NCBI GenBank assembly: GCA_002269645.1
Contig: NIVC01001476.1
Location: 186,001 to 250,000 of the forward strand
DNA: 64,000 nucleotides
Direction: 5' to 3'
Source of the DNA: Macrostomum lignano
Taxonomy: Eukaryota
The notes below the pieces were generated by a model that searched no databases, had not been told where the DNA came from, and saw only the letters and a program-made list of their open reading frames with translations. Of this stretch, positions 4,162-55,425 are shown piece after piece. The position numbers were made by a program, and so were the translations under genes. Position 1 is the stretch's first letter. Every line of letters starts with the position of its first letter.

Positions 4162-4207
4162 AGAGTGTGGCCGGTTGAGTGTGGCCAGGGACAGCTAGGC
4201 ACTTAGG

Positions 4208-5100
4208 CGATTTAGACACGATCTTATAGGCGATTTAGACACGATCTTATAGGTGATTTAGACACGATCTTATAAGTGATTTAGACACGATCTTATATAG
4301 GCGATTTAGACACGGTCTTATAAGTGATTTAGACACGATCTTATAGGTAATTTAGACACGATCTTATAGGTGATTTAGACACGATCTTATAAGTGATTTA
4401 GACACGATCTTATAGGTAATTTAGACACGATCTTATAGGTAATTTAGACACGATCTTATAGGTAATTTAGACACATCACTGAGGGCGATTTATACACACC
4501 ACTGAGGGCGATTTAGACACAGATTTGAGGTGATTTAGACACAGATATTGAGGTGATTTAGACACAGATATTGGGGTGATTTAGACACAAATATTGGGGT
4601 GATTTAGACAGATATTGGGGTGATTTAGACAGATATTGGAGTGATTTAGACACAGATATTGAGGTGATTTGGACAGATATTGGGGTGATTTAGACACAGA
4701 TATTGGGGCGATTTAGACAGATATTGGGGTGATTTAGACACAGATATTGGGGCGATTTAGACACAGATATTGGGGCGATTTAGACACAGATATTGGGGAG
4801 ATTTAGACACAGATATTGGGGCGATTTAGACACAGATATTGGGGCGATTTAGACACAATATATTTAATCAGTCTTTATCAACCTTGATGTAGTGTCTAAA
4901 TCGCCCCAATATCTGTGTCTAAATCGCCCCAATATCTGTGTCTAAATCTCCCCAATACTTGTGTCTAAATCATCCCAATATCTGTGTCTAAATCGCCCGA
5001 ATATCTGTGTCTAAATCTCCCCAATATCTGTGTCTAAATCTCCCCAATATCTGTGTCTAAATCGCCCCAATATCTGTGTCTAAATCGCCCCAATATCTCT
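4208..5100. repeat. 21-23-bp satellite with an inverted arm (foldback)
   Basis: gatttagacacgatcttatag / gatttagacacagatattgggg units at 4208-4857; reverse-complement units (tgtctaaatcgccccaatatctg) at ~4891-5100. Confidence 0.9.
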
Positions 5101-5234
5101 GTAAGCTTGGCACATTAAGAAAAAGAACTAGCATACTTCGGTGCACGAATTTACGCTTCATACTACTTTATACGTTACTAACAAGCATTCTGGGTTAAGC
5201 GGGACATAAAGTATGGAAACAGTAAGCATTAAAT

Positions 5235-8144: not shown

Positions 8145-8645
8145 GATTGGGATTTTGGGATCGGGATTTTGGGATCGGGATTTCGGAATCGGGATTTTGG
8201 GATCGGGATTTTGGGATCGGGATTTTGGGATCGGGATTTTGGGATCGGGATTTTGGGATCGGGATTTTGGGATCGGGATTTTGGGATCGGGATTTTGGGA
8301 TCGGGATTTTGGGATCGGGATTTCGAGATCGGGATTTCGGAATCGGAATTTCGGGATCGAGATTTGAATTTTTGGATCGAGATTTCGGGATCCGGATTTT
8401 GGGATCGGGATTTCGGGATAGGGATTTTGGGATCGGGATTTCGGGATCGGGATTTTGGGATCGGTATTTTGGTATTTTAATTTCGGGATCTGAATTTTGG
8501 GATTTGAATTTTGGGATCAGGATTTGAATTTTGTTATCGGAATTTCGAGATCGGGGTTTGAATTTTTGGATCGGAATTTCGGGATCGGGATTTCGAAGTC
8601 GGGATTCAGGATTCGAATTTGGGATCAGCATTCGGGTCTTGGGAT
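8145..8645. repeat. (GGGATC GGGATTT)n satellite, reverse complement of the 6400-6852 array
   Basis: gggatcgggattttgggatcgggatt units. Confidence 0.95.
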
Positions 8646-20300: not shown

Positions 20301-23300
20301 AGACATCAAAAACAACAGCTGGGTCACTCCATTTTGTTTAGAGTTTATTTCGTTCATTCTTGCATGGAGCTAACATGGAGCTAGCATGGAACTAGCATTG
20401 AGCTAGCATGTAACTAGCATGGAGCTAGCATGTAACTAGCATGTAACTAGCATGGAACTAGCATGGAACTAGCATGGAACTAGCATGTAACTAGCATGTA
20501 ACTAGCATGGAACTAGCATGGAACTAGCATGGAACTAGCATGTAACTAGCATGGAACTAGCATGTAACTAGCATGGAGCTAGCATGTAACTAGCATGGAG
20601 CTAGCATGTAACTAGCATGGAGCTAGCATGTAACTAGCATGGAGCTAGCATGTAACTAGCATGGAGCTAGCATGTAACTAGCATGGAGCTAGCATGTAAC
20701 TAGCATGTAACTAGCATGGAGCTAGCATGTAACTAGCATGGAGCTAGCATGTAACTAGCATGGAGCTAGCATGTAACTAGCATGGAGCTAGCATGTAACT
20801 AGCATGGAGCTAGCATGTAACTAGCATGGAGCTAGCATGTAACTAGCATGGAGCTAGCATGTAACTAGCATGGAACTAGCATGGAGCTAGCATGTAACTA
20901 GCATGGAACTAGCATGTAACTAGCATGGAACTAGCATGGAACTAGCATGTAACTAGCATGGAACTAGCATGGAACTAGCATGGAACTAGCATGGAGCTAG
21001 CATGTAACTAGCATGGAGCTAGCATGTAACTAGCATGGAACTAGCATGGAACTAGCATGGAACTAGCATGGAACTAGCATGGAACTAGCATGGAAGTAGC
21101 ATGGAACTAGCATGGAACTAGCATGGAACTAGCATGGAGCTAACATGGAGCTAGCATGTAACTAGCATGGAACTAGCATGTAGCTAGCATGGTGCTATCA
21201 TGGAGCTAGCATGGAGCTAGCATGGAACTAGCATGTAACTAGCATGGTGCTATCATGCAGCTATCATGGAGCTAGCATGGAACTAGCATGGAACTAGCAT
21301 GGAGCTAGCATGGAACTAGCATGTAACTAGCATGGAACTAGCATGGAACTAGCATGGAGCTAGCATGGAACTAGCATGTAACTAGCATGGAGCTAGCATG
21401 GAACTAGCATGGAACTAGCATGGAGCTAACATGGAGCTAGCATGTAACTAGCATGGAGCTAGCATGGAACTAGCATGGAACTAGCATGTAACTAGCATGG
21501 AACTAGCATGGAGCTAGCATGTAACTAGCATGGAGCTAGCATGGAACTAGCATGGAACTAGCATGGAGCTAGCATGTAACTAGCATGGAGCTAGCATGGA
21601 GCTAGCATGGAACTAGCATGTAACTAGCATGGAACTAGCATGGAGCTAGCATGGAACTAGCATGGAACTAGCATGGAACTAGCATGGAACTAGCATGGAA
21701 CTAGCATGGAACTAGCATGGAACTAGCATGGAACTAGCATGGAACTAGCATGTAACTAGCATGGAACTAGCATGGAACTAGCATGGAACTAGCATGGAAC
21801 TAGCATGGAACTAGCATGTAACTAGCATGGAACTAGCATGGAACTAGCATGGAACTAGCATGGAACTAGCATGGAACTAGCATGGAACTAGCATGGAACT
21901 AGCATGGAAGTAGCATGGAACTAGCATGTAACTAGCATGGAACTAGTATGGAGCTAGCATGGAACTAACACTGGAACTCAAAAAGTTCTTAGACACCCCT
22001 CATATCTCTGCATCTGTTCGACCGATTTTGATGATAATTTATACAAACATGGGTCTATATTTTGATGAATTCAGTGCTAGAGTTTCAGCTTGGTCGTATG
22101 GACAGAGCGAAAGCAGTCGATCATTTACTGACGAACCTGCGAAATTAGCAATACGATTTTAAGCACATAACAAAACGTACAAGCTAAAGGGCAAACGGTT
22201 CAAGTTGGCAAGTTCCCAAACTTCAAAAATCAGATCACCAATCATGAAAATCTTCGAAGTAATCACCGTTCCGTTGAATGCACTTGTCATACCGCATCCG
22301 CAGCTCTTCGATCCATCCTAACCACGTGTCTCTAGGAGTCGCTCTGATGAGCCCCTCAACAGCCGTTTGCAGCTCGGGGAAGCTAGCGAACCTCTTGCCT
22401 CTCAGCTGCGCCTTGACGTGTCCAAAAAGACCATAGTCAGACGGTGCCAAATCAGGCGAGTAGGGCGGATGCTGCCACTGCTGGAATCTGAGGCTGTCGA
22501 TGTGAGAGCGAGTGAGGGCTGCCGAGTGCGGCCGGGCATTGTCGCAGTGCAGCAGGACGCCCTTGCGCACGATCCGACGCCGTTGCAGTAGCTCCTGTCT
22601 CAGCCTCGTGAGCTCGTCACAAAACCGCTCGCTGTTCTGTGTCTGGCCCTGGCCGTACCACGTGAACATGAGGGGCCCGCTCGCATCCCAAAAAACACTT
22701 AACATGATCTTCTTGGGATAGGTGCCTGCGCTTTCGACGTCACCGCCGCCGCCACCCCTCGGAAGCCAGGCCCTCGACTCCCGCCGGGAGAGTGGGTCGT
22801 ACAGGGCAAACATGGACTCATCTTGAGTTACAAATCTGCTTTTGAACTCGTCTCCCAGAGCTGAAATTGCCGCCCTTTGTTGCAAGCAGACTTCGTATCG
22901 GCGATTTTTCTGCTCGGCAGTTAGCAGTCTTGGCACCCATCGAGAGACCAGCTTTGACAGACCAAGATGCTCGTGCAGAATTTGGAAGACCGAGCCACAC
23001 GAAATCCCGGCGGCATTGGCCAACTCGTCAATAGTGATGTGGCCGTTTTCACTTACCAGCTCTTCGATCAGGATGGCACTGCTGTCGTTGACTGCAGTAG
23101 CTGGTCGGCCTGAGCGTGGCTTGTCCTGCACGCTCATTTCGCCGTCCTTTCTCTTCCGGACCCAGTTCGCGACGGTTGCTCGACAGCAGGCATCATCTCC
23201 AAAACGGCTGACTAATCTCTGGTGGATAGTGTTCACGGACATTCCTTCGTCCGCAAAAGCAAAAACGATCAGGCGCTGCGAAACTTTATCGCCATATGCA

Positions 23301-26300
23301 CTAGCCATTCTTAAACCATCTGAGGTTGGTTCTGCATCTCAGCATTTCAATCTGACGTTCATTCTGCGCACTCAGTCTAAATGCTGCCTACTGCTTTGTT
23401 CTATCTTTTTTGTCTATGGCTAAACCCTCGCAGCTTGAAAGTAATGATTAATCAATACTCACCGAAAGCTTTTATTCCTCTAAAAACAAGCTGCGATTTC
23501 ACAACCCCCCCCCCCAGTTTAGAGTGAGGTCCAGATCCGATGCTGTTCAAAATCGTATTGCTAATTTCGTAGGTTCGTCAGTGAATGATCGATTGCTTTC
23601 GTTCTGTCTATACGACCAAGCTGAAACTCTAGCACTGAATTAATCAAATATAGACCCATGTTTGTATAAATTCTCATCAAAATCGGTCAAACAGATGCAG
23701 AGATATGAGGGGTGTCTAAGAACTTTTTGAATGCACTAAGGTAGTATAGTTACAGATTTTTGCCCATGGTTAAAACTGACGGATGTGACGTGATTTGCCC
23801 TTCCTACTATGCCATAAAGTTGAAGTTTACTGAAAGCAGAAGTTTTCCAAGTTGCATTGCTATAAAATGGAGCGACTCAATCCAGTGTTTGATGACCTGT
23901 GGTCTCTATTAGTCTTATCCTATTCATTAATTTCCTATTATCTTCTATTAATAATATACTTACCCCATTCTTGTACTGGTAGCTTTTCATATTAACTACC
24001 CATTAGGTGATTGTCTTTTAGTTTAAAACACTCAGTGCTGCCGCAGTGCTGTTAATGTTTTTGATTGTGAATTAAAAATTACGAGTATTCTAGATTAAAA
24101 CAAACTGTGTAAATTGTTCCACATGTACGTGTACTGTACACATTTTCAGGTGAAAGTTTTCTGCATTGCAATTGTCTGCATTTTCTATATTTATCTACTT
24201 TCACTGATGTTGTAAAATTACCTACGCGTGAACTGTGTACTGCATGCTGAGGTGCTTGGCATGTAGGTATTAGACAATTGCATATCAAAGCTTGACAGAC
24301 AGATAGACACATGCAGTGATTCAGAACTTACACACTCAGACAGATCTAAATGCATTCATAAATGCATTATTGACACAGATATCAATTACAGCATTGACTT
24401 GCAGGTCTGTACAGCATTGACAGGCAGATCTTTAATCCATAATCCGCAGGCGGGCAACGAAGGCGGCGACGGCGGCAGCGGCCAAAAAGGCTCCAAAGAT
24501 GACGAGGGCAGCCCGAACAGAATGCAGCGACCCTCCAGCGCCAAAGGCAATCGGCGTCTACGAGACGGTGAGTTGTCATGGTAACGACTTCAACTTTGGA
24601 ATTGTAGCTTATAGAAGTTTCCGGCGAGAAACCGTAGTAAGCTACTCGTATATCCTACTGTAAGAAATGATGCAAAAACAAACTACTAATACTACTTACT
24701 CGCTCACAGCAGCTTCGGGAAATATTACGAAGTAGTTTTGCATTTCCCAGATTTCACAAAATTTTCACTCACCCGTTTTATTTGTACTTTATAAAAGAAG
24801 ACTTTGAAACACCAGTAGGTTTTTTTATAGAAACACTTGTAGAAAGTGGATGTTAAACTTTAAACCTAAGGTAAATGCGTCTGACATCACTTTTCTCGCC
24901 ATTGACACCTCATCGAAAAAATAATAAACCGACGATTGTAGGTCGCCGGGCTCCAGCCAGCGCGGACTCAGGTTGAGTTTTAAATTAAGCACCTGACTTT
25001 TCTTATGCGCAGTGTGAAAATTGGTAAAAATCTTCTGGCAGGCCAGTGGAATATGAATAACATATGCTATATATACTACTGACTGATTTAAGTAGCATCG
25101 ATTAATGCGATATACTATTGTCAACTGGTTTGTCTTCTAACATTAATTATCTGTATCTTCTTAGCATAGCACTGCCTCCGTCTCTGTAGGTTCTTGACAA
25201 TATATACCCATGAATATTCTGGAAGGTGTAGAATGGATTGCTAATCTATCGTCTATGAATAAAGGTGTAGAATGGATTGCTAATCTATCGTCTATGAATA
25301 AAGGTGTAGAATGGATTGCTAATCTATCGTCTTTGAATAAAGGTGTAGAATGGATTGCTAATCTATCGTCTTTGAATAAAGGTGTAGGATTTCTAATCTA
25401 TCGTCTTTGAATAAAGGTGTAGAATGGATTGCTAATTTATCGTCTTTGAATAAAGGTGTAGGATTTCTAATCTATCGTCTTTGAATAAAGGTGTAGAATG
25501 GATTGCTAATCTATCGTCTTTGAATAAAGGTGTAGGATTTCTAATCTATCGTCTTTGAATAAAGGTGTAGAATGGATTGCTAATCTATCGTCTTTAAATA
25601 AAGGTGTAGAATGGATTGCTAATCTATCGTCTTTGAATAAAGGTGTAGAATGGATTGCTAATCTATCGTCTATGAATAAAGGTGTAGAATGGATTGCTAA
25701 TCTATCGTCTATGAATAAAGGTGTAGAATGGATTGCTAATCTATCATCTATGAATAAAGGTGTAGAATGGATTGCTAATCTATCGTCTATGAATAAAGGT
25801 GTAGAATGGATTGCTAATCTATCGTCTATGAATAAAGGTGTAGAATGGATTGCTAATCTATCGTCTATGAATAAAGGTGTAGAATGGATTGCTAATCTAT
25901 CGTCTATGAATAAAGGTGTAGAATGGATTGCTAATCTATCGTCTTTGAATAAAGGTGTAGAATGGAGTGCTAATCTATCGTCTTTGAATAAAGGTGTAGG
26001 ATTGCTAATCTATCGTCTTTGAATAAAGGTGTAGAATGGATTGCCAATCTATCGTCTATGAATAAAGGTGTAGAATGGATTGCTAATCTATCGTCTTTGA
26101 ATAAAGGTGTAGAATGGAGTGCTAATCTATCATCTATGAATAAAGGTGTAGAATGGATTGCTAATCTATCGTCTATGAATAAAGGTGTAGAATGGATTGC
26201 TAATCTATCATCTATGAATAAAGGTGTAGAATGGATTGCTAATCTATCGTCTATGAATAAAGGTGTAGAATGGAGTGCTAATCTATCGTCTTTGAATAAA

Positions 26301-29300
26301 GGTGTAGAATGGATTGCTAATCTATCGTCTATGAATAAAGGTGTAGAATGGATTGCTAATCTATCATCTATGAATAAAGGTGTAGAATGGATTGCTAATC
26401 TATCGTCTATGAATAAAGGTGTAGAATGGATTGCTAATCTATCGTCTTTGAATAAAGGTGTAGAATGGATTGCTAATCTATCGTCTATGAATAAAGGTGT
26501 AGAATGGATTGCTAATCTATCGTCTTTGAATAAAGGTGTAGAATGGATTGCTAATCTATCGTCTATGAATAAAGGTGTAGAATGGATTGCTAATCTATCG
26601 TCTATGAATAAAGGTGTAGAATGGATTGCTAATCTATCGTCTATGAATAAAGGAGTAGAATGGATGGGAGTTGACAATCTATAGTTTATGGATAGATAAA
26701 TCGAACGGATTGTTAATCTAGCTAGTGTCCGTTAAGCCTACTGAATAAAAAATCCAATTTTTTAAATATCCTTTTATGCATCTCTTCTGTCTCGAGCCCA
26801 GCGATTATGCCAATGTGTTTTGTTGGCTATCCATTAACATGTATACCAAGTGCCAAAAACGTGAACTTCTGTTTTGCTTCATTACATAATTCCTTAACTG
26901 GCAGAATGCGTTCTAACTACTGCTCAGCAATAGATCAGTAGTGCGGTTCGCTAATTGCACTATAAATTAATTTCAAATGGACATTATAAATATACTTTCA
27001 CCCAGGCAAAATAGCAATTTGTGTTGGCCATTATTCCACAGTTGCTCCCCAATGTACATTTACCCATGTACAAATATGTCATCACGTGACTGCTTTCCCG
27101 CATTTATAATCTTACTATCCACCCCTCTGCATATTTGCATTAGCATGGAATAAGTGTGGAATAATGGCATCTGGGCTGGGCTAAATGCAATAAAATGCAT
27201 TTGTTTAGTGTATAGCACAGATACTGGAATAACTAGATGGGTCACTTAGCACATTTGCGTGCAAGCTACTTTCAGTTCAGTAGTAAGTTTAACAGAAACA
27301 TTTTATTGTATTTTTAAAGCCAAGGCTCATTTATTGGCTCTTACCCCCCAGCTTAAACGCTCCAAGCGCGCCTTTCCACACTATCCCCCACCCCGCGCCC
27401 AATTTCTAATTGGCAGCCTAAAGCTGCCATGTACATTTCAGTGGACTGGCTAATGTATATTACTGCTGAACCAATTAGCAAGCTGTTTACACCTCCAAGC
27501 TTGGGCTTCTAAACTTATCAAAGTCATTTCAGCCGCCTTTATTTTTATAAAATAACTTATGTATTCTTCTTTGCTACTGAACTGAAAGTAGAAAGCTGTT
27601 TTGCTAAGTATTATATGCCTGGGTGGCCGCCCATCTAGATATTTCGGTGCTCGCATTTCTGCAGCCATTATTCAACACAGCTAGGGGTGCATACTGAACA
27701 AGTCTGCCATTGCACTGATCTAGTTTTGGTATTAACCAAAATCGTCTATATTTATCTGGTTAATCGCCGCACAGACAATCTCTAATGAAAATTCAAATAA
27801 AATATTATTCGGATTTCTATTCTCAAAACTTCCACGTTACCCTTTCAGAAGAAGAGCAGCAGCGCAGGCAAAGAGGTGACGCAGAGGAGCCCAGCGGGTG
27901 AGTGGGGAACAGTCGAGGCAAGGAGCCTCAAATATTTGAAATTTTAGGGCTGCGGGCGACATGTCCCACAACCAGCGCTCACACAGGGTGTACAGCAGCC
28001 CTGACTTTCTAATCGTCGGGAATGTACACTCTTCAATGTACACACGAGGGTTTGGCCCTGATGGCTGTGAATCGCACACGACAACGCCATTTTTTGTACT
28101 CAAGCCCCAAATATGGCCGCTCATGGAATCGAACCAGGAGTCGAGGCGTGAGGAATTATAAAAAAAAAACAGCGAATAACCTACTCTAGAATATCCCAGA
28201 AGTAGCCTCAGAAATGTCTCAAAGTAAGCCTAAGATTCCTAATAATTATTTCTCGGAAAAATAAGCACACAAATATCAACTTATACACCTTGAGAAGCTT
28301 GAGAGTAGCACCTACAATTACCCCAATAGTATCTTCTGACATACCCACAGAAATACACACAGATGTACCCATAGAAATGCCAATCGAAGTGCATGTACTC
28401 TCCCAAATACCACAGAAAGAGTACCCCCCGAAATACCCAAGAACAAATACCCTCCGGAATACCCCAGAAAGAATACCCTCCAAAATACCCCAGAAAGAAT
28501 ACCCTCCGAAATATCCAAGAACAAATACCCTCCGGAATACCCCAGAAAAAATACCCTTCGAAATATCTCAGAGGTAATACCCTTAAAAACACCTACGAAC
28601 AAATACCTTTCGAAACACCCCCAAAAATACCCTCAGAAATACCCCAAAAAATAATACCCTCCTACCCGAAAAAATACCCTCCAAACTACCCCAGAAGAAG
28701 GCTAAAACACTGGGAAATTCCCCGCCCCTCCCCCACGCAGTAGCGGTGGCCGAACCTCCAGCGCCAAGCCGGCGCCGCTGCCGAAGACCAAGGCCGGCGC
28801 CGCGGTGGTCGACGACGGCAGCGGCAAGCGCGTCAGCGGGGTGATCATCGAGCGCGACCAGGATTCCGACGACGACCAGTTCGTGGTGGAGGAGGCGCCG
28901 CCAACCCTGCTAGCCGGCGGCCTCGGTGACGACGGCGGCGGCGGCCTCGACGACGACGAAGAAGGTCGCGACGAGCAGCACGGCGGGCTGGTGAAGGAGA
29001 TGCTGAAGTCCAAGCAGGAGTTCAAGGACGCCAGCGGCGGCGCCAAGGACGCCGGCGGCAAGACGGTGCTGACCACCACAGACGCCAACAGGAAGCGGGA
29101 GAAGGCGGCCACGGCCAGGGAGATTGACAGGCTGAAGCAGCAGCTGCAGGCGCTGACCCGGGAGGCCAACCCGCTCGGCAAAGTCATCGACTACGTGCAG
29201 GAAGACCTGGACTCCATGTCAAAGGAGCTGGAGCGGTGGCGCGCCGAGACAAAAGAGGTCATGGCCCGGCTGAAGCAGGAGCAGAGGTACGAAATCCAAT

Positions 29301-30955: not shown

Positions 30956-31454
30956 CTTTTGCAGAGAGCCAGCCGCATTCAACTGCATTCTCAGCTTGGC
31001 AACCGCCCCCCCCTCACCCCTAGCAGAGTCGCACTTTGTCCAAAAATCAAAATTTCTAACGTTTGCTAACTATCATCGAATGCTGAATATGCTACTAACA
31101 GCGAAAGCCATCAGCTAAGTAGTATAATAGATATATCTTACAGTCTATATGTATACAATTAACGAGCAAGTTGTTAGCGCACCGCACTCTGCTGCACTTT
31201 CGATTTAAACAGCAGAGCCCCCTCAACACTCTTAATGACTTTGATTTACTCGTGAAATTGACTGAATTATGCTTTATTTTAGTTTACTACTCAAGTCTCA
31301 ATGTCAATAAAAAGTAATAAATAATAGATGCCTGATGAATTCGACTCAAACACACGAGCATCTTGTCGGCTCAGCCAATTTAATGGAGCGAGCTGATTTT
31401 ATACGGCTTCTGGTCTGAGCTTCTGGTTCGCCACTACCGCTTTCATAGGACCCA

Positions 31455-33180
31455 CAACAGACATCCCAAACAGAACAGCGCCCTACAACAGACACTCCAA
31501 ACAGAACAGCGCCCTACAACAGACACTCCAAACAGAACAGCGCCCGACAACAGACACCCCAAACTGAACAGCGCCCGACAACAGACACCCCAAACAGAAC
31601 AGCGCCCGACAACAGACACCCCAAACTGAACAGCGCCCGACAACAGACACCCCAAACAGAACAGCGCCCTACAACAGACACTCCAAACTGAACAGCGCCC
31701 GACAACAGACACTCCAAATGGAACAGCGCCCTACCATGAAGCAAATTTGACTAAAAAATTGTCATCAGCAGCATAGTTAGAAGCGAGACACTGAAAAACA
31801 TCAACCCGTATTTCCCCAGACTCTTCTCCACCCCCTAGCACAGAAAATTTTCCTATTGCTGTCCCTCTAGGCAACTCGTGACGCGCAACAATCTTGGGCT
31901 GGCGCCAGCGCCTGCTAAAAATTCAATCTCAAAAGTAGGCCAGCTCGAGGATAAACAGTCGCGCAGGCGGATAATCTAGAGATGAGGGGGGGGGCGTCGC
32001 AGCGCCTACCTAATTGAAACTTCCGGGAGAACTTCGGGATCCGGGATGCGGGCTCTGAGATAGATCCAACCCCCCCCCAGTGCTCAATACAGAAGCCTTC
32101 CACCCAAACTGCGCGACTCTTCAAAGCAGAAAACGAAGACGAAGGGAGGCAGGTGAAAAAGCCGGCAACGAATGTAAAAAAATAGTTTTCTAAAAGCCTA
32201 TGCAAAAAACAGTCGGAGTAGCTTTTGAGAGGGGCAACAGTCAGTCTGCTTTTGCGTGACCAACTGCCAAGATTCTCATGACAAGCGTCTTTAGTTAAGG
32301 CGAAAAATTCAAAATAAGTTTCCGAAATGATTTTTTTGATAGAGCCAATCGATTCTAGACTTTGGTAAACTGACTGATCTAAAGTGGCTTCAGTTTAGGG
32401 TGTCTCTTGTAGGGTGCTGTTCAGTTTGGGGTGTCTGTCATAGGGCGCTGTTCAGTTTGGGGTGTCTGTTGTAGGGTGCTGTTCAGTTTGGGGTGTCTGA
32501 TGTAGGGCGCTGTTCAGTTTGGAGTGTCTGTTGTAGGGCGCTGTTCAGTTTGTGGTGTCTGTTGTAGGGCGCTGTTCAGTTTGGAGTGTCTGTTGTAGGG
32601 TGCTGTTCAGTTTGGGGTGTCTGTCATAGGGCGCTGTTCAGTTTGGGGTGTCTGTTGTAGGGCGCTGTTCAGTTTGGGGTGTCTGTAGGGCGCTGTTCAG
32701 TTTGGGGTGTCTGTTGTAGGGCGCTGTTCAGTTTGGGGTGTCTGTAGGGCGCTGTTCAGTTTGGGGTGTCTGTAGGGCGCTGTTCTGTTTGGAGTGTCTG
32801 TTGTAGGGCGCTTTTCAGTTTGGGGTGTCTGTTGTAGGGCGCTGTTCAGTTTGGGGTGTCTGTCATAGGGCGCTGTTCAGTTTGGGGTGTCTGTTGTAGG
32901 GCGCTGTTCAGTTTGTGGTGTCTGTTGTAGGGCGCTGTTCAGTTTGGGGTGTCTGTTGTAGGACGCTGTTCAGTTTGGAGTGTCTGTTGTAGGGTGCTGT
33001 TCAGTTTGGGGTGTCTGTCATAGGGCGCTGTTCAGTTTGGGGAGTCTATTGTAGGGTGCTGTTCAATTTGGGGTGTCTGTTGTAGGGTGCTGTTCAGTTT
33101 GGGGTGTCTGTTGTAGGGCGCTGTTCAGTTTGGGGTGTCTGTTGTAGGGCGCTGTTCAGTTTGGGGTGTCTGTTGTAGGG
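31455..33180. repeat. Two inverted arrays of one ~31-bp minisatellite flanking a ~650-bp spacer
   Basis: cagacaccccaaactgaacagcgccctacaa at 31455-31735; its reverse complement at 32390-33180. Confidence 0.93.
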
Positions 33181-33709
33181 CTGCTCCTAGGCGAGTTGCT
33201 GCTGGTAGGAGCAAGCCCTGTTGCTTTACCTGCCCCAATGACACATTGGGATTTACAATCAGATGGTGGGGCAACATGCGCTGCTGGAAATTTTTCAGCC
33301 AGATTCTCTTCAAACTGCCGAGCACCCATTTACTCACAGGCAACAATAGTTCATTGTTTGGGTAAACATTTTTTCTAGAAAAGCAGAACTGAACTCAGAC
33401 CGAGCCAGCAAGCAGACGGGAAGGAAGGGACAGGCAAACATCGTAAGCGACGAAATCTGAAGTGGGCAGCAGGCCGCTCACTGCTGCATTCCCTGACATT
33501 TGGGAGACCTCTTGAGAATCTGGGGATGGAAAGAGCCACAATTCCGCAGATCCCTAAAAGCTCCGTTTCTGGAGCGCCGCAGGAGAGCGAAACACTGCTT
33601 GTTCGCTCTTCAGGCACTGACCAGGGAGCACTAGGACAGAGATTCTGGAGTGGCGACTGAGCTGACAGCGGAATTCGTCAGAGTTCGTGTTGCTACAGGG
33701 ATAACGTAG

Positions 33710-34283
33710 AATCCAGACTTCTATCTTCAGGCGTCCCTGGTCCAACTCTCGTCATCAATCCCAGTAAGAGAGCTTCGCAGTTTCCAATCCAGACTTCTAT
33801 CTTCAGGCGTCCCTGGTCCAACTCTCGTCATCAATCCCAGTAAGAGAGCTTCGCAGTTTCCAATCCAGACTTCTATCTTCAGGCGTCCCTGGTCCAACTC
33901 TCGTCATCAATCCCAGTAAGAGAGCTTCGCAGTTTCCAATCCAGACTTCTATCTTCAGGCGTCCCTGGTCCAACTCTCGTCATCAATCCCAGTAAGAGAG
34001 CTTCGCAGTTTCCAATCCAGACTTCTATCTTCAGGCGTCCCTGGTCCAACTCTCGTCATCAATCCCAGTAAGAGAGCTTTGCAGTTTCCAATCCAGACTA
34101 CTATATTCAGGCGTCCCTGGTCCAACTCTCGTCATCAATCCCAGTAAGAGAGCTTTGCAGTTTCCAATCCAGACTACTATATTCAGGCGTCCCTGGTCCA
34201 ACTCTCGTCATCAATCCCAGTAAGAGAGCTTTGCAGTTTCCAATCCAGACTTCTATCTTCAGGCGTCCCTGGCCCAAGCTCTC
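33710..34283. repeat. 76-bp tandem repeat (~7.5 near-identical copies)
   Basis: ctatcttcagg recurs at 33721, 33797, 33873... Confidence 0.97.
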
Positions 34284-36585: not shown

Positions 36586-37079
36586 TATCTCATCCCTAGC
36601 TTCAGTCACATCTCAATCTCTAGAGGCGCAGGCCTGCTCGATTTGCAGTTACGCTCGTAAAAGAGTTCTAAAGGTACTATATTGTCAATTTAGTCGCATG
36701 ACTGCGAGATTAAATATGACTGTCAGAGAGCAGAAAACCTGTTTCGAATTGCAGCCATAAAGTGAGAACTGGGACAAGTTTAAAAAATTATTTTCCCGCT
36801 TTGAAAACGAAAGGTTTTTGTTCGAAATATTTCTCCAGACAGCAATGTGAGCTTTGCTCGATATGCGTTTATTTGCATTTACAAGCAATGCAGGAAAAAA
36901 AGAAACGACATTAATAATTAAAAAATATTTTTGGATTGTCTGACTTTTACAGCCTGTTTTCAAAAACAAATATTTTTCCCGAAATGTGCTTATCATGCTG
37001 CTTTGGTCAGTAGATTATCATGAATCAGTACACGTACGTGTGATAAAATTCCAAAATAATAATTGTTCCTAAGCACTTA

Positions 37080-38537: not shown

Positions 38538-41166
38538 ATGGGTCCTGATGAAGATGACCAGTCGCCAGATATTCACCACTTCTTTATCGATAAGCAAGTG
38601 ATGCTTGATAGCATCAGCAACTTCTGGTTAAATTTTCCATTCTACATTCTTGTTCTACTGACTGCCTACTTTGTACTGAGGTGAGTAGTTTCATGATAAG
38701 CTCGCATCAGTTCTACTGGCTTTTTATGAGAATCTAAATGCATGAAGATGCAACATGAATTGTGGGACTTAGTCATGCACTCCTAGAGGGTCTTCGCGGG
38801 TTTATCGGCCACTGGTGTTTACTGGCTTAGTTTATGCATGGGATGTTGGTGTATTCTGAGTTAGTTTATGAAGTGTTAGTGCATTGTGGGTTAATTTATA
38901 GGGTGTTGGTGTACTCTGGCTTAGTTTATGGGGTGTTGGTGTACTCTGGCTTAGTTTGTAGGGTGTTGGTGTACTCTGGGTTAGTTTATGGGGTGTTGGT
39001 GTATTCTGGGTTAATTTATGGGGTGTTGGTGTACTCTGGGTTAGTTTTTGGGGTGTTGGTGTATTCTGGGTTAGTTTATGGGGTGTTGGTGTATTCTGGG
39101 TTAGTTTATGGGGTGTTGGTGTATTCTGGGTTAGTTTATGGGGTGTTGGTGTATTCTGGGTTAGTTTATGGGGTGTTGGTGTATTATGGGTTAGTTTATG
39201 GGGTGTTGGTGTACGACTTCCGCGCCCTACGCGACCTGGTTACAAGTGGCCGCTTCTGTCTGGCATTTGCCGAGGCGCTAGAAGAACGGCCAGATACAAC
39301 AACCCCAGGCGAATATCCGGACATCAGTGCCGCCATCCAAGCCGCCGCTACAAAAACTCTACCGCTGGTGAAGCCAGCAGAAAGGAGTCGGCCAGTGTGG
39401 CAGAACGACGAAGTGCTGCGGCAGGCCCGAGCTGACAGTGGAGAGACTGCGGAGGAGCGGACAGCCCGCGGAGAAGGAAGACGAGACTCTAGTGGAGGAA
39501 TTTAAAGCCCGGCAACGCGCCGCGGTAGAGACCGCTTTTCAAGAGATCACGGACGCCGGTCCCGACAAGAAACCGCGTGCTGTCTGGTCGGTCGTCAATC
39601 AGCTGACAGGCCGCAAGAGACGCAACGCTCTGAACCTGGCGGGTGACACACCCGAAGAGAGGCGAAACGAGCTGCGGACCTTCTTCGCTGGTATCGTCAA
39701 CGCGCCTCCTCCGCCGCAAAGGGACGACATGTCATGGCCCACGGAGGTTGAGCTGCCAGAGGAGAGCTCCTTTAACATCAGCCCCATCACCATCGACGAA
39801 GTGCTCCAACTTGCAAAGAAGACGCCAGGCAACAAGGCTACTGGACCAGACGACGTGCCTGTCGAGGTGCTGCGCCTCCTGCAAGTCGCGCTGGAAGTCC
39901 CACGAGTGATGAACTACGTGCTAGCTGGGGGCCCCGCCCCTGCTGAGTGGCGGACTGCGCATATCGTCGGGATCCCAAAGAAACCAGGTTCCGTCAAGGT
40001 CGAAGAACATCGCGGGATTTCGCTAATGTCCTGCACAGCTAAGCTATTTAACAGAGTTTTGCTGTCGCGGCTGCAGCCAGTGCTGGACCCATTCCTCCGG
40101 CGCGAGCAAAATGGATTCCGGCCAGGCAAAGGCACCGTGACCAAAATTCTCGCTCTGCGTCGAATTCTAGAAGAGGCCCGCATCCACCAGTCGACCATCA
40201 TCTGCATCTTCGTAGACTTCCTGAAGGCCTTTGACTCGGTGTCGAGGCGGGTCATCGCGAACATCCTGCGCGCGTATCACGTACCCGAGCAGCTGGTGAC
40301 GGCTGTGTTAGCTCTGTAACAGGAAACTAGGGAGGCAGTTGTGACACCGGATGGCCATTCCGACTTCTTCGACACGTCTTCCAGCGTTCTCCAAGGGGAC
40401 ACCTTGGCTCCTTTTCTCTATTCGTCCTGGTCCTGGACTGGGTACTGCGCACTGACCTCCCTGACGACTCCAAAGGATTCTTGCTCTGCCGCAGAACAAG
40501 CAGGCGACACCCCGAGAAGCGACTCTCCGTCCTAGCGTTCGCGAACGATCTAGCGCTGCTGTCTAGCACAGCTGAAGGAGCTCAACGCCTGCTAGACCAA
40601 CTGACGGCGGCGGCCGCTGTGATCGGACTGTCCGTGAATACCAAAAAGAAAATGGTGTTGACCGTGCCGACGGACCTCCCAGCTGAGATCTACTGCCGCT
40701 GCACGAACGTGGTATGGTGGTCAGGTGCCAAGCATCACGGAGGACATGGCACGGCGCAGGGCGCTTGCCTAGGGGCACATTCCGCACCGTGTGGACTGTC
40801 CTGCAGAGCCCCGCGCTGCCGGATCGGCTGAGAGGGCGGCTGTTCCAGGCCGTCATTGAAACCGTCCTCTTTTACGACGGGCTGCTGCTATCCCTTCAAG
40901 GGCTGCGGCGGCTTGGTCAGGCGAGAAGTCTGCGTTTCGTCGACCTGCTTTTAAGAGACGCTGAAATCTCCGACCGCTAGCGGACTCGCTATTCTGCGCA
41001 AATCTGCGCTTGCGCGCGCATTTTGACAGCACCCCAACTTAATTGGCTTGCCCAGGGTTGCTGTAGTTTGTTGTTGTTTGTTGTTGTTGTGTACGACTAA
41101 ACTGAAACATTTTCCAATTTCAGACATCTTGCCGAAGAGACAGCAGAAGTCCGAAGTGAGACCTGA
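38538..41166 (+). CDS. Putative 61-aa single-pass membrane microprotein (2 exons)
   Basis: Exon 38538-38680 MGPDEDDQSPDIHHFFIDKQVMLDSISNFWLNFPFYILVLLTAYFVLR|GTGAGT; exon 41124-41166 (tttcag|A HLAEETAEVRSET*); phase 2 matches; aataaa near 41314. The N-terminus could be longer. Confidence 0.45.
38830..39212. repeat. 30-bp minisatellite
   Basis: gggttagtttatggggtgttggtgtattct units. Confidence 0.95.
39219..41088 (+). mobile_element. 5'-truncated, decayed non-LTR retrotransposon (RTE-like reverse transcriptase)
   Basis: KATGPDDVP, WRTAHIVGIPKK, HRGISLMSCTAKLFNRVLLSRL, EQNGFR, FVDFLKAFDSV, LQGDTLAPFL, FANDLAL (YADD degenerated); frameshifts and a stop at 40317; (GTT)n tail; 10-bp TSD GTGTACGACT (39209-39218, 41089-41098). 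Confidence 0.92.
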
Positions 41167-52004: not shown

Positions 52005-52628
52005 ATGTCAGTCTCCTCTCTGGCCCGCCCCGGCCGATTTCTCTACTTCGGTTTTGGCAGCAACCTGCTGCGTGAGCGGCTTCGTCTGGCCAACAAGTCG
52101 GCCAAATTTCAGGCCACCGGCCGCCTGTCCGGTTATCGGCTGGAATTCGCCGACCCATCGCATTCGCTGCCGCAGTCGGATCGCGATAAAGCGCAGCGCA
52201 CTTGGCACGGCGGCGCGGCCACTATAGTTGAAGCCGACGCCCAGAAGTTTGTCTTTGGCACCGTCTGGTCCCTAGCCGATGGCGACTCCGACTCGTTGGA
52301 CAGTCAGGAAGGCGTCGACAGTGGAATCTACGAGCGAATCAGCGTGACAGTCAGGCTGCTGGACTCCGGGCAGGAGGTCCGGTGCCGCAGCTACCGCATG
52401 GTCCGCTGCCAGCCCATGGCCCCGTCGCCGCACTATCTCGACATCATCCTCCGCGGCGCCGTTCAATCCGGCTTTCCAGCCGACTATGTCGACAATTTGC
52501 GCAAACGGCAGCACAATGGCTACGCTGGCGAGTGCATAAAATACTTTGAAGTGTTGCGGCAGTGCGCGGCAGCCGCTGATGATGTACCGCCATGCCAGAT
52601 TGATGCGCTGCGCGGCCTGCAATTCTGA
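52005..52628 (+). CDS. GGCT: Gamma-glutamylcyclotransferase, single exon, 207 aa
   Basis: FLYFGFGSNL, WHGGAATIVE, VFGTVW, SLDSQEGV (catalytic Glu), PSPHYLDIILRGA, HNGYAG motifs. Confidence 0.95.
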   Translation: MSVSSLARPGRFLYFGFGSNLLRERLRLANKSAKFQATGRLSGYRLEFADPSHSLPQSDRDKAQRTWHGGAATIVEADAQKFVFGTVWSLADGDSDSLDSQEGVDSGIYERISVTVRLLDSGQEVRCRSYRMVRCQPMAPSPHYLDIILRGAVQSGFPADYVDNLRKRQHNGYAGECIKYFEVLRQCAAAADDVPPCQIDALRGLQF

Positions 52629-53476: not shown

Positions 53477-54193
53477 AGTGTATCTGTCTGGGTGAAATCC
53501 TAAAGCTGCAATTTTCAACTAATTTTTGTATATTTCAAGCTTCAATTGTGCCGAATATTGCTTTTAATAAAGATATCGCTTGTTCTATGCATAATGGGCG
53601 ACAGGGTACATTTATAGTCTGCATCGAAGAATGTTGATACGTTTTAGATCTTCAGTGATTTCTTTCTACTCTGTGTTGACGGGTCTCTGGGCAGCAGGCT
53701 GAGTTGTTCAATTTGAAACCTGGTGGGAAACCTCATGAGCGGCTCTTGAAGTGCTTATTTGAAATATAAATGTTAGCGTTATGTTATTGCAATATTTATT
53801 ACTAGAAAGTTCCTATAAAATCGATTATCATCAAACTTTAATCTGTTGGAGTTCAAAAGTGATTTTTTTCTCCAAGTTATTACTTACAGTAGATAGTTAA
53901 ATAAATGTAAATAGATGTACAATCTGGCTTTTCCCGAAGTTATTCCCCGATGCATGAGGTCTATTGTGCCCTAAAATCTGGTTCAATCCGGAATTAATGT
54001 TTAGCGACTTTGTCTATGAAATTTTACATTCTTCAGCTATAGATTAGCAATCCATTATAGTATATAGTTTAGCAATACACATTCTGGTCTATAGATTAGC
54101 AATCCACTAGTTCCATGTTTAGCGACTTTGCTTATGGAAGTTTACATTCTTCAGCTATAGATTAGCAACCAACTAGTCTATACAAAACTCAAT

Positions 54194-54241
54194 ATTATTT
54201 GCGACGCGTTTCGGCTAAAACTAGCCATCTTCAGGCACTAT
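54194..54241 (-). ncRNA. Minimal type I hammerhead ribozyme (identical mirror copy)
   Basis: Exact reverse complement of 54278-54325 within the palindrome. Confidence 0.75.
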
Positions 54242-54277
54242 CGAACAGAATTTATTTCAACCTGTTCAATCTGTTCG

Positions 54278-54325
54278 ATAGTGCCTGAAGATGGCTAGTT
54301 TTAGCCGAAACGCGTCGCAAATAAT
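54278..54325 (+). ncRNA. Minimal type I hammerhead ribozyme
   Basis: UGC-CUGAAGA-U-GGCUA(GUUU)UAGCC-GAAA-CGCGUC^GCA: conserved core, 5-bp stem II, palindromic ACGCGU helix III, GUC cleavage triplet at 54314-54316, short stem I (UGC/GCA). Confidence 0.75.
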
Positions 54326-54371
54326 ATTGAGTTTTGTCTTACTATTATCTGTTAAGAGTGCTTCTCTACCG

Positions 54372-55425
54372 CAACTAGTCTATAGATTAGCAATCCACTA
54401 GTCTATAGATTAGCAATCCACTATTCTATAGATTAGCAATCCACTATTCTATATATTAGCAATCCACTAGTCTATATATTAGCAATTCACTAGTCTATAG
54501 ATTAGCAATCCACTAGTCTATATATTAGCAATTCACTAGTCTATAGATTAGCAATTCACTAGTCTATATATTAGCAATTCACTAGTCTATAGATTAGCAA
54601 TTCACTAGTCTATATATTAGCAATTCACTAGTCTATAGATTAGCAATCCACTAGTCTATAGATTAGCAATTCACTAGTCTATAGATTAGCAATTCACTAG
54701 TCTATAGATTAGCAATCCACTAGTCTATATATTAGCAATTCACTAGTCTATAGATTAGCAATCCACTAGTCTATATATTAGCAATTCACTAGTCTATAGA
54801 TTAGCAATTCACTAGTCTATAGATTAGCAATTCACTAGTCTATAGATTAGCAATTCACTAGTCTATAGATTAGCAATCCACTAGTCTATATATTAGCAAT
54901 TCACTAGTCTATAGATTAGCAATTCACTAGTCTATAGATTAGCAATTCACTAGTCTATAGATTAGCAATCCACTAGTCTATATATTAGCAATTCACTAGT
55001 CTATAGATTAGCAATCCACTAGTCTATATATTAGCAATTCACTAGTCTATAGATTAGCAATTCACTAGTCTATATATTAGCAATTCACTAGTCTATAGAT
55101 TAGCAATTCACTAGTCTATATATTAGCAATTCACTAGTCTATAGATTAGCAATCCACTAGTCTATAGATTAGCAATTCACTAGTCTATAGATTAGCAATT
55201 CACTAGTCTATAGATTAGCAATCCACTAGTCTATAGATTAGCAATCCACTAGTCTATAGATTAGCAATCCACTAGTCTATATATTAGCAATTCACTAGTC
55301 TATAGATTAGCAATCCACTAGTCTATATATTAGCAATTCACTAGTCTATAGATTAGCAATTCACTAGTCTATAGATTAGCAATTCACTAGTCTATAGATT
55401 AGCAATCCACTTGTCTATAGATTAG
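54372..55425. repeat. 23-bp minisatellite (~45 copies)
   Basis: tagtctatagattagcaatccac / ...aattcac units; degenerate copies begin ~54035. Confidence 0.98.

What the first reader, a model, noticed from the sequence alone, without database searches (positions are those of the whole stretch)
54170..54384. Perfect 68-bp palindrome encoding twin minimal hammerhead ribozymes: a Penelope-like or retrozyme-type insertion in a satellite
Seen: zero-mismatch arms (54182-54249 / 54270-54337), 20-nt loop, 34-nt tail, and 13-bp TSD CAACTAGTCTATA, a variant of the host satellite unit found only at the two flanks. Each strand reads CUGAAGA-U-GGCUA(GUUU)UAGCC-GAAA-CGCGUC^, with an extra U after the CUGANGA box and a self-complementary ACGCGU helix III. 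Knowledge: Penelope-like elements carry minimal type I hammerheads that work as dimers and often insert with inverted terminal repeats. Inference: a very recent insertion. Transcription in either direction gives an RNA that can fold either as a long hairpin (siRNA source, ribozyme off) or as a ribozyme, i.e. a potential conformational switch or a non-autonomous ribozyme retro-element of only 189 bp.
Basis: partly seen in the sequence, partly recalled or inferred. Interest (0 to 1): 0.8.

Follow-up and report, generated by a model that had tools for sequence, protein, structure and literature searches.

The report
Truncated head-to-head Penelope-like retroelement insertion
A 189-bp insertion in a flatworm (Macrostomum lignano) satellite is two inverted, severely shortened ends of a Penelope-like retrotransposon, each with that family's minimal hammerhead ribozyme motif; it is a tidy example of a known kind, not a new ribozyme switch.

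Summary
There is a 68-nt perfect inverted repeat (54182-54249 / 54270-54337), a 20-nt spacer, a 34-nt one-sided tail, and CAACTAGTCTATA at both flanks and nowhere else in the window. Each arm carries a full hammerhead core on opposite strands.

The window is Macrostomum lignano, contig NIVC01001476.1. Two paralogous loci have the same gene and satellite but no insert.

Every structural feature matches published Penelope-like element (PLE) insertions:
- a minimal type-I hammerhead with an extra base between A9 and G10.1, and a palindromic helix III;
- the bases A9-U-G10.1 forming an AUG that opens a reading frame, as in Anolis Poseidon_Ac;
- a head-to-head 5'-truncated copy;
- a 30-40-bp tail at one end only;
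- a short target-site duplication, in tandem-repeat DNA.

The best reading is that both cut target strands primed reverse transcription from start sites 34 nt apart, giving a dead-on-arrival insertion younger than the paralogue split.

Not supported:
- A conformational switch. The hairpin is -130.6 kcal/mol against about -2 to -7 for the ribozyme fold.
- A self-sufficient 189-bp element. This could not be tested.

Rfam hammerhead models do not detect the motif. No autonomous RT/GIY-YIG partner could be searched genome-wide. It is a new member of a known kind, of modest interest.

The parts
54170..54182 (.). Left copy of the 13-bp target-site duplication, CAACTAGTCTATA. Its last base also counts as the first base of the palindrome.
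   Evidence: It has only two occurrences in the window, at 54170 and 54372. Excising the insert plus one copy restores the 23-bp satellite phase.
54183..54249 (-). Left arm: an antisense-oriented, 5'-truncated copy of the element's 3' end. It ends at the inner reverse-transcription start site and has no tail.
   Evidence: 100% reverse complement of 54270-54337.
54203..54234 (-). Minimal hammerhead core on the minus strand, with the predicted cut after the base at 54203.
   Evidence: Exact 32-mer match and descriptor hit.
54250..54269 (.). 20-nt junction or spacer, ATTTATTTCAACCTGTTCAA. It is extra 5' sequence belonging to one of the two copies, but which one cannot be decided. It contains CTGTTC, which is also found at the start of the right arm.
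   Evidence: Assigning it to an arm needs a family consensus, which is not available.
54270..54337 (+). Right arm: a sense-oriented, 5'-truncated copy of the element's 3' end.
54273..54284 (+). 5' strand of hammerhead helix I. 54282-54284 pairs with 54317-54319, G54281 is unpaired, and 54273-54280 pairs with 54325-54332.
   Evidence: Pairing enumerated and its energy evaluated.
54285..54316 (+). Minimal type-I hammerhead core: C3UGAAGA9, an inserted U, helix II GGCUA/UAGCC with loop GUUU, G12AAA15.1, palindromic CGCG, U16.1 and C17. The cut falls after C54316.
   Evidence: The features match the PLE minimal-hammerhead description in PMC4209133 and the Poseidon_Ac junction sequence.
54317..54332 (+). 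3' strand of helix I: GCA, a 5-nt internal loop AAUAA, then UAUUGAGU.
54291..54371 (+). Putative start of the element's reading frame. The AUG is made of A9, the inserted U and G10.1, followed by 27 open codons (MASFSRNASQIILSFVLLLSVKSASLP) that run to the end of the tail.
   Evidence: the other two frames are closed and there is an in-frame stop 4 codons upstream. The layout is the same in Poseidon_Ac and in A. vaga Pen2a, where the pLTR holds 12 aa, or 22 aa with the tail. No database protein shares this peptide.
54338..54371 (+). 34-nt 'tail', present at the right end only. It is the sequence between the inner and outer reverse-transcription start sites.
   Evidence: Unique in the window. 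PLE tails of 30-40 bp on one end only are described in PMC8557442 and PMC3846280, and explained by two RT start sites in PMC11167929.
54372..54384 (.). Right copy of the 13-bp target-site duplication.
54374..55425 (.). Host 23-bp satellite, the insertion target (about 46 units). Degenerate units also lie at 54038-54182.
   Evidence: The same satellite, without the insert, is present in paralogous loci L002 and L003.

Best explanation
This is a dead-on-arrival insertion made by the Penelope-like element (PLE) integration machinery in Macrostomum lignano.

Proposed sequence of events (inferred):
1. The element's GIY-YIG endonuclease nicked both strands of an AT-rich 23-bp satellite, 13 bp apart.
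2. Each 3'-OH primed reverse transcription of the element RNA at one of two internal start sites 34 nt apart. This left the 'tail' at the right end only.
3. Both cDNAs stopped after only about 68-88 nt and were joined head-to-head. That produced a 68-bp perfect inverted repeat, a 20-nt junction and a 13-bp target-site duplication.

The retained piece is the pLTR/ORF-start region of the element. It carries the family's minimal type-I hammerhead. The A9, inserted U and G10.1 of that motif form the element's AUG, and its helix III exists only as an intermolecular palindrome (ACGCGU). The motif can therefore act only as a same-strand dimer, or with protein help.

At this locus the two ribozyme copies are on opposite strands, so any read-through transcript folds into a 68-bp hairpin and the ribozyme is off.

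Shown directly: the anatomy, the motif, absence from the paralogous loci, and the energetics. Inferred: the order of integration steps and the identity of the source element.
For: Anatomy and statistics.

Organism: the window's GGCT gene maps to GCA_002269645.1, contig NIVC01001476.1. A cluster mate is named Macrostomum lignano, and NIVC00000000 is the Mlig_3_7 assembly.

Empty sites: paralogous loci L002 and L003 share the flank up to window position 54182 and the satellite from 54374 onward. They have no insert, no hammerhead and no CAACTAGTCTATA.

Age: L002 and L003 are about 99% identical to each other and about 95.7% identical to the window in unique DNA. At that divergence roughly 3 differences would be expected in the arms plus duplication, and none is seen.

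Matches to published PLE features:
- strong 5' truncation, an adjacent inverted 5'-truncated copy, a 30-40-bp tail at one end, and insertion bias for microsatellites (PMC8557442);
- A. vaga Pen2a, with an inverted pLTR, a 31-bp tail, a 9-bp duplication, and a pLTR holding the first 12 aa of the ORF, or 22 aa with the tail (PMC3846280);
- Poseidon_Ac protein cleaves and extends both strands, starts reverse transcription at two internal sites that delimit the tail, and has its ORF starting at stem II (PMC11167929).

Direct sequence comparison: the Poseidon_Ac junction reads CTGAGG|ATGCCTGCC...GGGCGAAACGTC^A, the same A9-U-G10.1 = AUG layout as here. Here the AUG frame stays open for 27 codons to the end of the tail, while the other two frames are closed.
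Against: - No RT/GIY-YIG reading frame was found in the window or in the two paralogous loci (tblastn with Poseidon_Ac).
- No protein among 5.8 billion shares words with the 27-aa N-terminal peptide. No autonomous partner has been identified, so the source could be a non-autonomous PLE derivative.
- No other copy of the element could be retrieved, so there is no covariation or family evidence for the ribozyme.
- Rfam hammerhead models do not score the motif.
- The 13-bp duplication lies in a tandem repeat. Two neighbouring units plus a 10-bp target deletion could mimic it.
- The orthologous satellite unit is not preserved in the paralogues, which also lack an adjacent 43-bp segment.
Confidence: 0.8

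Rival explanations
1. The 189-bp hairpin is itself the full-length unit of a tiny non-autonomous, ribozyme-bearing retroelement family. It would be copied as a palindrome rather than created at integration.
For: The unit has clean boundaries and a target-site duplication. Non-autonomous PLE derivatives and retrozymes exist (bioRxiv 10.64898/2026.07.22.740005; PMC8557442). No autonomous partner was found.
Against: An RNA with a 68-bp perfect stem is a poor reverse-transcription template. PLE biology already explains head-to-head 5'-truncated copies formed at insertion. There is only one copy in about 104 kb of M. lignano DNA examined. The tail asymmetry fits two RT start sites on a linear sense RNA.
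Confidence: 0.08
2. It is a functional hairpin-RNA locus, either a source of siRNA or a conformational switch between a Dicer-substrate hairpin and an active ribozyme.
For: There is a perfect 68-bp stem with a 20-nt loop at -130.6 kcal/mol. The locus lies between convergent genes, GGCT (+) and a DEAH helicase (-), so read-through transcription is conceivable. Rfam miRNA-precursor models give sub-threshold hits that reflect the hairpin shape.
Against: The ribozyme fold is worth only -2.2 to -7.2 kcal/mol and helix II has a probability of 1.7e-16 in the full transcript, so no thermodynamic switch exists. All Rfam hits are far below their gathering scores (63 vs 95 bits and worse). The insert is absent from both paralogous loci, so it is not a conserved gene. 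No expression data were available.
Confidence: 0.06
3. It is a foldback or MITE-type DNA transposon with 68-bp terminal inverted repeats, and the hammerhead motif is a coincidence.
For: Long perfect inverted repeats and a flanking direct repeat.
Against: The inverted repeat is not terminal on the right, where 34 nt of unique tail separate it from the duplication. As far as I know, a 13-bp duplication is longer than those reported for eukaryotic DNA-transposon superfamilies, which run to about 11 bp. A full minimal-hammerhead motif with an AUG layout identical to Poseidon_Ac was never produced in 300 shuffles.
Confidence: 0.03
4. It is an assembly artefact, a long-read palindrome or chimera.
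For: To my knowledge the Mlig_3_7 assembly is based on long reads. Perfect palindromes can arise when hairpin adapters are missed.
Against: Such artefacts are kilobase-scale and usually lie at contig ends. Here a 189-bp unit sits 64 kb inside a 256-kb contig, with a precise duplication, an asymmetric tail and in-phase satellite on both sides.
Confidence: 0.02

Closest known systems
Penelope-like element insertions with inverted pLTRs and a one-sided tail (for example Pen2a_Av of Adineta vaga, Penelope/Poseidon clade; PMC3846280, PMC8557442)
   Same: Head-to-head inverted copy, 5' truncation, a 31-40-bp tail at one end only, a short duplication (8-10 bp there, 13 bp here), and a terminal repeat that contains the first codons of the ORF, extended by the tail. 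The target is repetitive DNA.
   Different: Only about 68-88 nt of each copy is retained. There is no ORF body and no direct pLTR pair. The host is a macrostomid flatworm, for which I found no PLE or hammerhead report in the held literature.
Poseidon_Ac (PAc) of Anolis carolinensis, characterised in vitro (PMC11167929)
   Same: The hammerhead straddles the start codon, with A9-U-G10.1 forming the AUG. The cut site falls 26 nt (here) or 29 nt (PAc) into the ORF. Helix I is short and helix III is minimal and palindromic. Two RT start sites delimit the tail, and both target strands are cleaved and extended.
   Different: The RT start sites lie 47 and 81 nt into the ORF here, against 111-118 nt in PAc. 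Helix II is 5 bp against 6 bp. Helix III is ACGCGU against ACGU. There is no detectable sequence similarity outside the core.
Minimal hammerhead ribozymes of metazoan PLEs (Cervera & de la Pena 2014, PMC4209133)
   Same: [quoted passage not shown]
   Different: Here the two motifs are only 82 nt apart and belong to a perfect palindrome. Activity is untested.
Non-LTR retrozymes of animals (PMC7229834; bioRxiv 10.64898/2026.07.22.740005)
   Same: Small non-coding units with type-I hammerheads. They are thought to derive from PLE pLTRs and to be mobilised by PLE enzymes.
   Different: Retrozymes are direct tandem repeats with all ribozymes on one strand, and they yield circular RNAs. This locus is a single inverted pair.
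L1 twin priming (inverted, 5'-truncated LINE-1 insertions)
   Same: Both ends of a staggered break prime cDNA synthesis, which gives an inversion junction inside a truncated insertion flanked by a duplication. This comparison rests on my own knowledge and was not checked here.
   Different: In L1 the second primer anneals internally, so the two segments are different parts of the RNA. Here both arms copy the same 3' region, as expected for PLE enzymes that initiate at defined internal sites on both strands.

Membership tests
Hammerhead ribozyme (type I, minimal / PLE type) | Conserved core C3-U4-G5-A6-N7-G8-A9, G12-A13-A14, A15.1/U16.1, H17 | tested here: met
   CUGAAGA ... GAAA ... U-C is present at 54285-54316 (+) and 54234-54203 (-).
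Hammerhead ribozyme (type I, minimal / PLE type) | Helix II closed by a G10.1-C11.1 pair | tested here: met
   GGCUA/UAGCC, 5 bp with loop GUUU, plus a single unpaired U between A9 and G10.1, as described for PLE minimal hammerheads.
Hammerhead ribozyme (type I, minimal / PLE type) | Helix I formed by the sequences flanking the core and the cleavage site | tested here: met
   3 bp, a 1x5 internal loop, then 8 bp including 3 G-U pairs. The monomer fold is weak, at -2.2 to -7.2 kcal/mol.
Hammerhead ribozyme (type I, minimal / PLE type) | Helix III, here possible only as an intermolecular palindrome (double hammerhead) | tested here: inconclusive
   ACGCGU is self-complementary. The double-hammerhead structure scores -23.9 kcal/mol, against -29.9 for the cofold minimum and -22.6 for two monomers. 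It is feasible but not favoured, and there is no same-strand partner at this locus.
Hammerhead ribozyme (type I, minimal / PLE type) | Match to the curated covariance models (Rfam hammerhead families) | tested here: not met
   No hammerhead hit at gathering threshold, nor at E <= 10 on 801 nt or 80 nt. My own understanding, not tested here, is that these models expect a helix III hairpin; no positive control with a known PLE hammerhead could be run.
Hammerhead ribozyme (type I, minimal / PLE type) | Covariation among homologues and self-cleavage | not testable with these tools
Penelope-like element insertion | Single ORF with a telomerase-like RT and a GIY-YIG endonuclease | tested here: not met
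   The insert is 189 bp. tblastn with Poseidon_Ac finds nothing in the window, L002 or L003. A genome-wide search for the partner was not possible. A 5'-truncated copy is not expected to contain the ORF.
Penelope-like element insertion | Hammerhead motif in the terminal repeat, overlapping the start of the ORF | tested here: met
   The AUG is A9-U-G10.1, with 27 open codons to the end of the tail. The layout is identical in Poseidon_Ac.
Penelope-like element insertion | 5' truncation with an adjacent inverted copy (head-to-head) | tested here: met
   68-nt perfect inverted arms with a 20-nt junction. Described in PMC8557442 and PMC3846280.
Penelope-like element insertion | A 30-40-bp tail present at one end only | tested here: met
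   A 34-nt tail at 54338-54371 on the right end only.
Penelope-like element insertion | Short target-site duplication and a demonstrable empty site | tested here: met
   A 13-bp duplication unique to the two flanks, with satellite phase restored on excision. Two paralogous loci lack the insert. Caveat: the exact orthologous satellite unit is not conserved in them.
Non-LTR retrozyme | Direct tandem repeats of about 170-400 bp, each with a same-strand hammerhead | tested here: not met
   There are only two motif copies, on opposite strands, and no direct repeat of the unit in the window.
Foldback / MITE DNA transposon | Inverted repeats that reach both termini, next to the duplication | tested here: not met
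   On the right, 34 nt of unique tail lie between the arm and the duplication.
miRNA / hairpin-RNA gene (Rfam MIR6440, MIR8007 and others) | Score at or above the family gathering threshold | tested here: not met
   The best score is 63.2 bits against a threshold of 95. Matches to several unrelated plant and animal families reflect a generic perfect hairpin.

The most novel reading that the evidence does not exclude
Head-to-head PLE insertions like this one may act as ready-made hairpin-RNA genes. Read-through transcription would give a perfect 68-bp dsRNA covering the element's ribozyme, start codon and RT-initiation region, so the element's own integration by-products would seed RNAi or piRNA silencing of the family.

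[quoted passage not shown] That would couple ribozyme folding or cleavage to translation, since cleavage would cut the start codon off the rest of the ORF.
Probability: 0.12. Interest if true: 0.55.

Novelty: new member of a known kind. Interest (0 to 1): 0.3.

Why it matters
The locus is a compact natural record of how Penelope-like elements integrate: priming on both strands, two internal reverse-transcription start sites 34 nt apart, and extreme 5' truncation. It agrees in a flatworm with what was reconstituted in vitro in 2024 for a lizard element, which suggests the mechanism is conserved across bilaterians.

It also points to a PLE or PLE-dependent family that was active recently in Macrostomum lignano, a model species for regeneration and transgenesis. 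I found no report of hammerhead ribozymes or PLEs for this species in the held literature.

It shows that the A9-U-G10.1 = AUG overlap of ribozyme and start codon is shared by very distant PLEs.

It does not reveal a new class of ribozyme, switch or mobile element.

Tried and rejected
- **Rfam scans.** The whole window at gathering threshold, then 801-nt and 80-nt slices at E <= 10, gave no hammerhead hit, only sub-threshold miRNA-hairpin hits. I read the miRNA hits as generic hairpin matches.
- **Element ORF.** A search with the 27-aa peptide encoded from the AUG, padded with X to reach the length minimum, found no protein sharing words with it.
- **Sampling more M. lignano DNA through multicopy transposon proteins.**
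  - The window's mariner ORF is not on record.
  - A chimeric mariner + LINE-RT query returned only short transcript-like contigs and other species.
  - Look-ups of a signal-peptide ORF and of an M. lignano RT protein also failed.
  - No further copies of the element could therefore be examined.
- **Public DNA collections.** An exact or loop-degenerate 32-mer search in JGI metagenome contigs and IMG/VR gave 0 matches.
- **PLE reverse transcriptase nearby.** tblastn with the Poseidon_Ac protein against the window, L002 and L003 gave no significant hit.
- **Relaxed hammerhead descriptor.** Allowing U3-A8 and 3-bp helix II picked up only a weak motif in the 76-bp repeat at 33710-34283 and one at 36801. 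Both lack G10.1-C11.1 and the U-H site, so I rejected them as chance.
- **Literature.** Lunse et al. 2017 (PMC5785218) is not held. The Cervera 2014 supplements are not held. No paper links Macrostomum to hammerhead ribozymes or describes its PLEs.
- **First dimer model.** It was a pseudoknot and gave a nonsense energy. I replaced it with the correct nested double-hammerhead topology.
Full report
**1. Observation**

- Positions 54182-54249 and 54270-54337 are a 68-nt inverted repeat with no mismatch, separated by 20 nt.
- The right arm is followed by 34 nt of sequence that is unique in the window.
- The 13-mer CAACTAGTCTATA brackets the whole unit, at 54170 and 54372, and occurs nowhere else on either strand. 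The usual satellite variants CCAC.../TCAC... occur 14 and 28 times.
- Deleting the 189-bp unit plus one 13-mer leaves a 23-bp satellite in perfect phase.
- As RNA, the 215-nt region folds at -130.6 kcal/mol, against -39.7 +/- 4.1 for shuffles, z = -22.

**2. The hammerhead motif**

Each arm reads, on opposite strands, CUGAAGA-U-GGCUA(GUUU)UAGCC-GAAA-CGCG-U-C^. All invariant core positions are present: C3-A9, G12-A14, A15.1/U16.1 and C17. Helix II has the G10.1-C11.1 closing pair. Helix I can form as 3 bp, a 1x5 internal loop and 8 bp.

I wrote an RNAmotif-like descriptor for minimal type-I hammerheads. It found only these two sites in 64 kb and none in 300 first-order Markov shuffles.

Rfam's covariance models do not report a hammerhead at gathering threshold, nor at E <= 10 on 801-nt or 80-nt slices. 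What they report are sub-threshold miRNA-precursor matches, which only reflect a perfect hairpin. The ribozyme assignment therefore rests on motif logic and on comparison with the literature, not on a curated model or on covariation.

**3. Organism and empty sites**

A single-exon gamma-glutamylcyclotransferase-like ORF lies 1.5 kb upstream, at 52005-52628. It maps the window to GCA_002269645.1, contig NIVC01001476.1. Its 90%-identity cluster mate is annotated Macrostomum lignano, and NIVC00000000 is the Mlig_3_7 assembly.

The cluster mate sits on two other contigs, L002 and L003.
- Both align with the window up to position 54182 and again from 54374.
- Both carry the same 23-bp satellite.
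- Neither has the 189-bp unit, a hammerhead motif or the CAACTAGTCTATA variant.

L002 and L003 are about 99% identical to each other and about 95.7% identical to the window in unique DNA. At 4% divergence about three differences would be expected across the two arms and the duplication, and none is seen. The insertion is therefore younger than that split.

Two caveats apply. The paralogues also lack a 43-bp segment just upstream (54113-54155), so the exact orthologous satellite unit is not preserved. And in a tandem repeat, two neighbouring units plus a 10-bp target deletion could imitate a duplication. The duplication reading is simply the more parsimonious one.

**4. What it is**

Every feature matches what is published for Penelope-like elements (PLEs).
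- **Cervera & de la Pena 2014** describe metazoan PLE minimal hammerheads. [quoted passage not shown] They also report activity only as dimers, and frequent paired motifs on opposite strands attributed to truncated PLEs.
- **Craig et al. 2021** describe heavy 5' truncation, an adjacent inverted 5'-truncated copy, a 30-40-bp tail at only one end, and insertion bias for microsatellites.
- **Arkhipova et al. 2013** describe A. vaga Pen2a, with an inverted pLTR, a 31-bp tail and a 9-bp duplication. Its pLTR contains the first 12 codons of the ORF, or 22 with the tail.
- **Frangieh et al. 2024** show that purified Poseidon_Ac protein cleaves and extends both DNA strands. It starts reverse transcription at two internal RNA sites whose interval is the tail, and its ORF begins at hammerhead stem II.

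The published Poseidon_Ac consensus reads ...CTGAGG|ATGCCTGCC...GGGCGAAACGTC^A across the tandem junction. Its A9, extra U and G10.1 are the start codon.

The Macrostomum unit has the same arrangement. A54291-T-G is an AUG followed by 27 open codons that run exactly to the end of the tail. The other two frames are closed, and there is an in-frame stop four codons upstream. The arm holds 15.7 codons and the arm plus tail holds 27, which parallels the 12 and 22 of Pen2a. The cut site lies 26 nt into the ORF here and 29 nt in PAc.

**5. Mechanism (inferred)**

- A staggered double nick 13 bp apart was made in the AT-rich satellite.
- The top-strand 3'-OH primed cDNA from the inner start site (...GAGUUUUG).
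- The bottom-strand 3'-OH primed cDNA from the outer start site 34 nt downstream (...CUCUACCG).
- Both cDNAs aborted after about 68-88 nt and were joined head-to-head.
- The 20-nt spacer is the extra 5' extension of one of the two copies. Which copy cannot be decided without a family consensus.
- CTGTTC occurs both in the spacer and at the start of the right arm, which hints at a microhomology-assisted junction.

The result is non-coding and cannot retrotranspose.

**6. Function at this locus**

- The monomeric ribozyme fold is worth -2.2 kcal/mol, or -7.2 without the lone A-U pair.
- A trans double hammerhead is worth -23.9 kcal/mol, against a cofold minimum of -29.9.
- In a transcript that spans both arms, the helix II pair has a probability of 1.7e-16.
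- The two motifs are on opposite strands, so one RNA contains a sense and an antisense copy and not the same-strand pair that dimeric hammerheads need.

A long perfect hairpin could be a Dicer substrate if it is transcribed. The locus lies between convergent genes, but no expression data were available.

**7. What could not be done**

I could not search the M. lignano genome for further copies or for the autonomous RT/GIY-YIG partner.
- No protein in the 5.8-billion-sequence collection shares words with the 27-aa peptide.
- Poseidon_Ac tblastn finds nothing in the 104 kb of M. lignano DNA available.
- Attempts to sample more of the genome through transposon proteins failed.
- The 32-mer is absent from the metagenome and viral collections.

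The source may therefore be an autonomous PLE or a non-autonomous pLTR-derived element. The possibility that the hairpin is itself the transposing unit remains open, at low probability.

**8. Verdict**

The object is real and well described. Its Penelope-type nature is strongly supported. It is a new member of a known kind, in a species for which I found no PLE or hammerhead report in the held literature. The more exotic readings (switch, twin active ribozymes, self-sufficient 189-bp element) are unsupported or untested. Interest is modest, at 0.3.

Noticed in passing
window 1-64000: Tandem repeats make up 33.9% of the window. There are 49 separate arrays, 36 of them at least 200 bp long, with many different unit sequences of 4-108 bp. 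They are spaced roughly every kilobase, including inside introns of a DEAH-helicase gene.
   Followed up: partly
window 4205-4861 / 4892-5102; 6401-6851 / 8145-8525; 31454-31731 / 32389-33181: Several minisatellite arrays come as inverted pairs of the same unit (20/22, 12/13 and 29/31 reverse-complement identity between consensus units). They form large array-level palindromes of unknown origin.
   Followed up: partly
window 25223-26665 vs 54374-55425: The 39-bp satellite contains the reverse complement of the core of the 23-bp host satellite (GGATTGCTAATCTAT; 19/23 between units; 29 against 18 exact 15-mer hits). Related satellites therefore lie 28 kb apart in opposite orientation.
   Followed up: partly
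window 22235-23308 (-): An intact 357-aa mariner-like transposase ORF (Pfam Transposase_1, DDE_3, HTH). A 98%-identical protein is encoded on a 1.8-kb ENA contig, so the element may be active. This exact product is not on record as a called gene in the collection searched.
   Followed up: partly
window 39438-40319 (+), continuing to about 41400: A LINE-type reverse transcriptase fragment (Pfam RVT_1) that continues in other frames after frameshifts. It is a decayed non-LTR element and not a PLE.
   Followed up: partly
window 53997-54064 vs 54115-54182; 54113-54155: The unique 'head' that precedes the satellite is present twice, 118 bp apart and 85% identical. The 43-bp second head is missing from both paralogous loci. 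This is probably unequal exchange within the array, and it lies 27 bp from the PLE insertion.
   Followed up: partly
L002 (NIVC01000910.1:174899-195522), L003 (NIVC01000152.1:662941-683564): There are three copies of this gene neighbourhood in the assembly. Two are about 99% identical to each other and the window copy is about 96% identical to them, which fits the layered duplication reported for this neopolyploid genome.
   Followed up: partly
window 33710-34283 (-): Each unit of a 76-bp tandem repeat contains CUGAAGA...GAAAC. Helix II would be only three weak pairs, and there is no G10.1-C11.1 pair or U-H site, so I judged it a chance resemblance to a hammerhead.
   Followed up: yes
window 54291-54293 and the Poseidon_Ac consensus (PMC11167929 supplementary file): In both a lizard and a flatworm element, the 'extra' nucleotide between hammerhead positions 9 and 10.1 is the U of the element's AUG start codon. 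If this is general, it would explain why that insertion is conserved in PLE hammerheads.
   Followed up: partly
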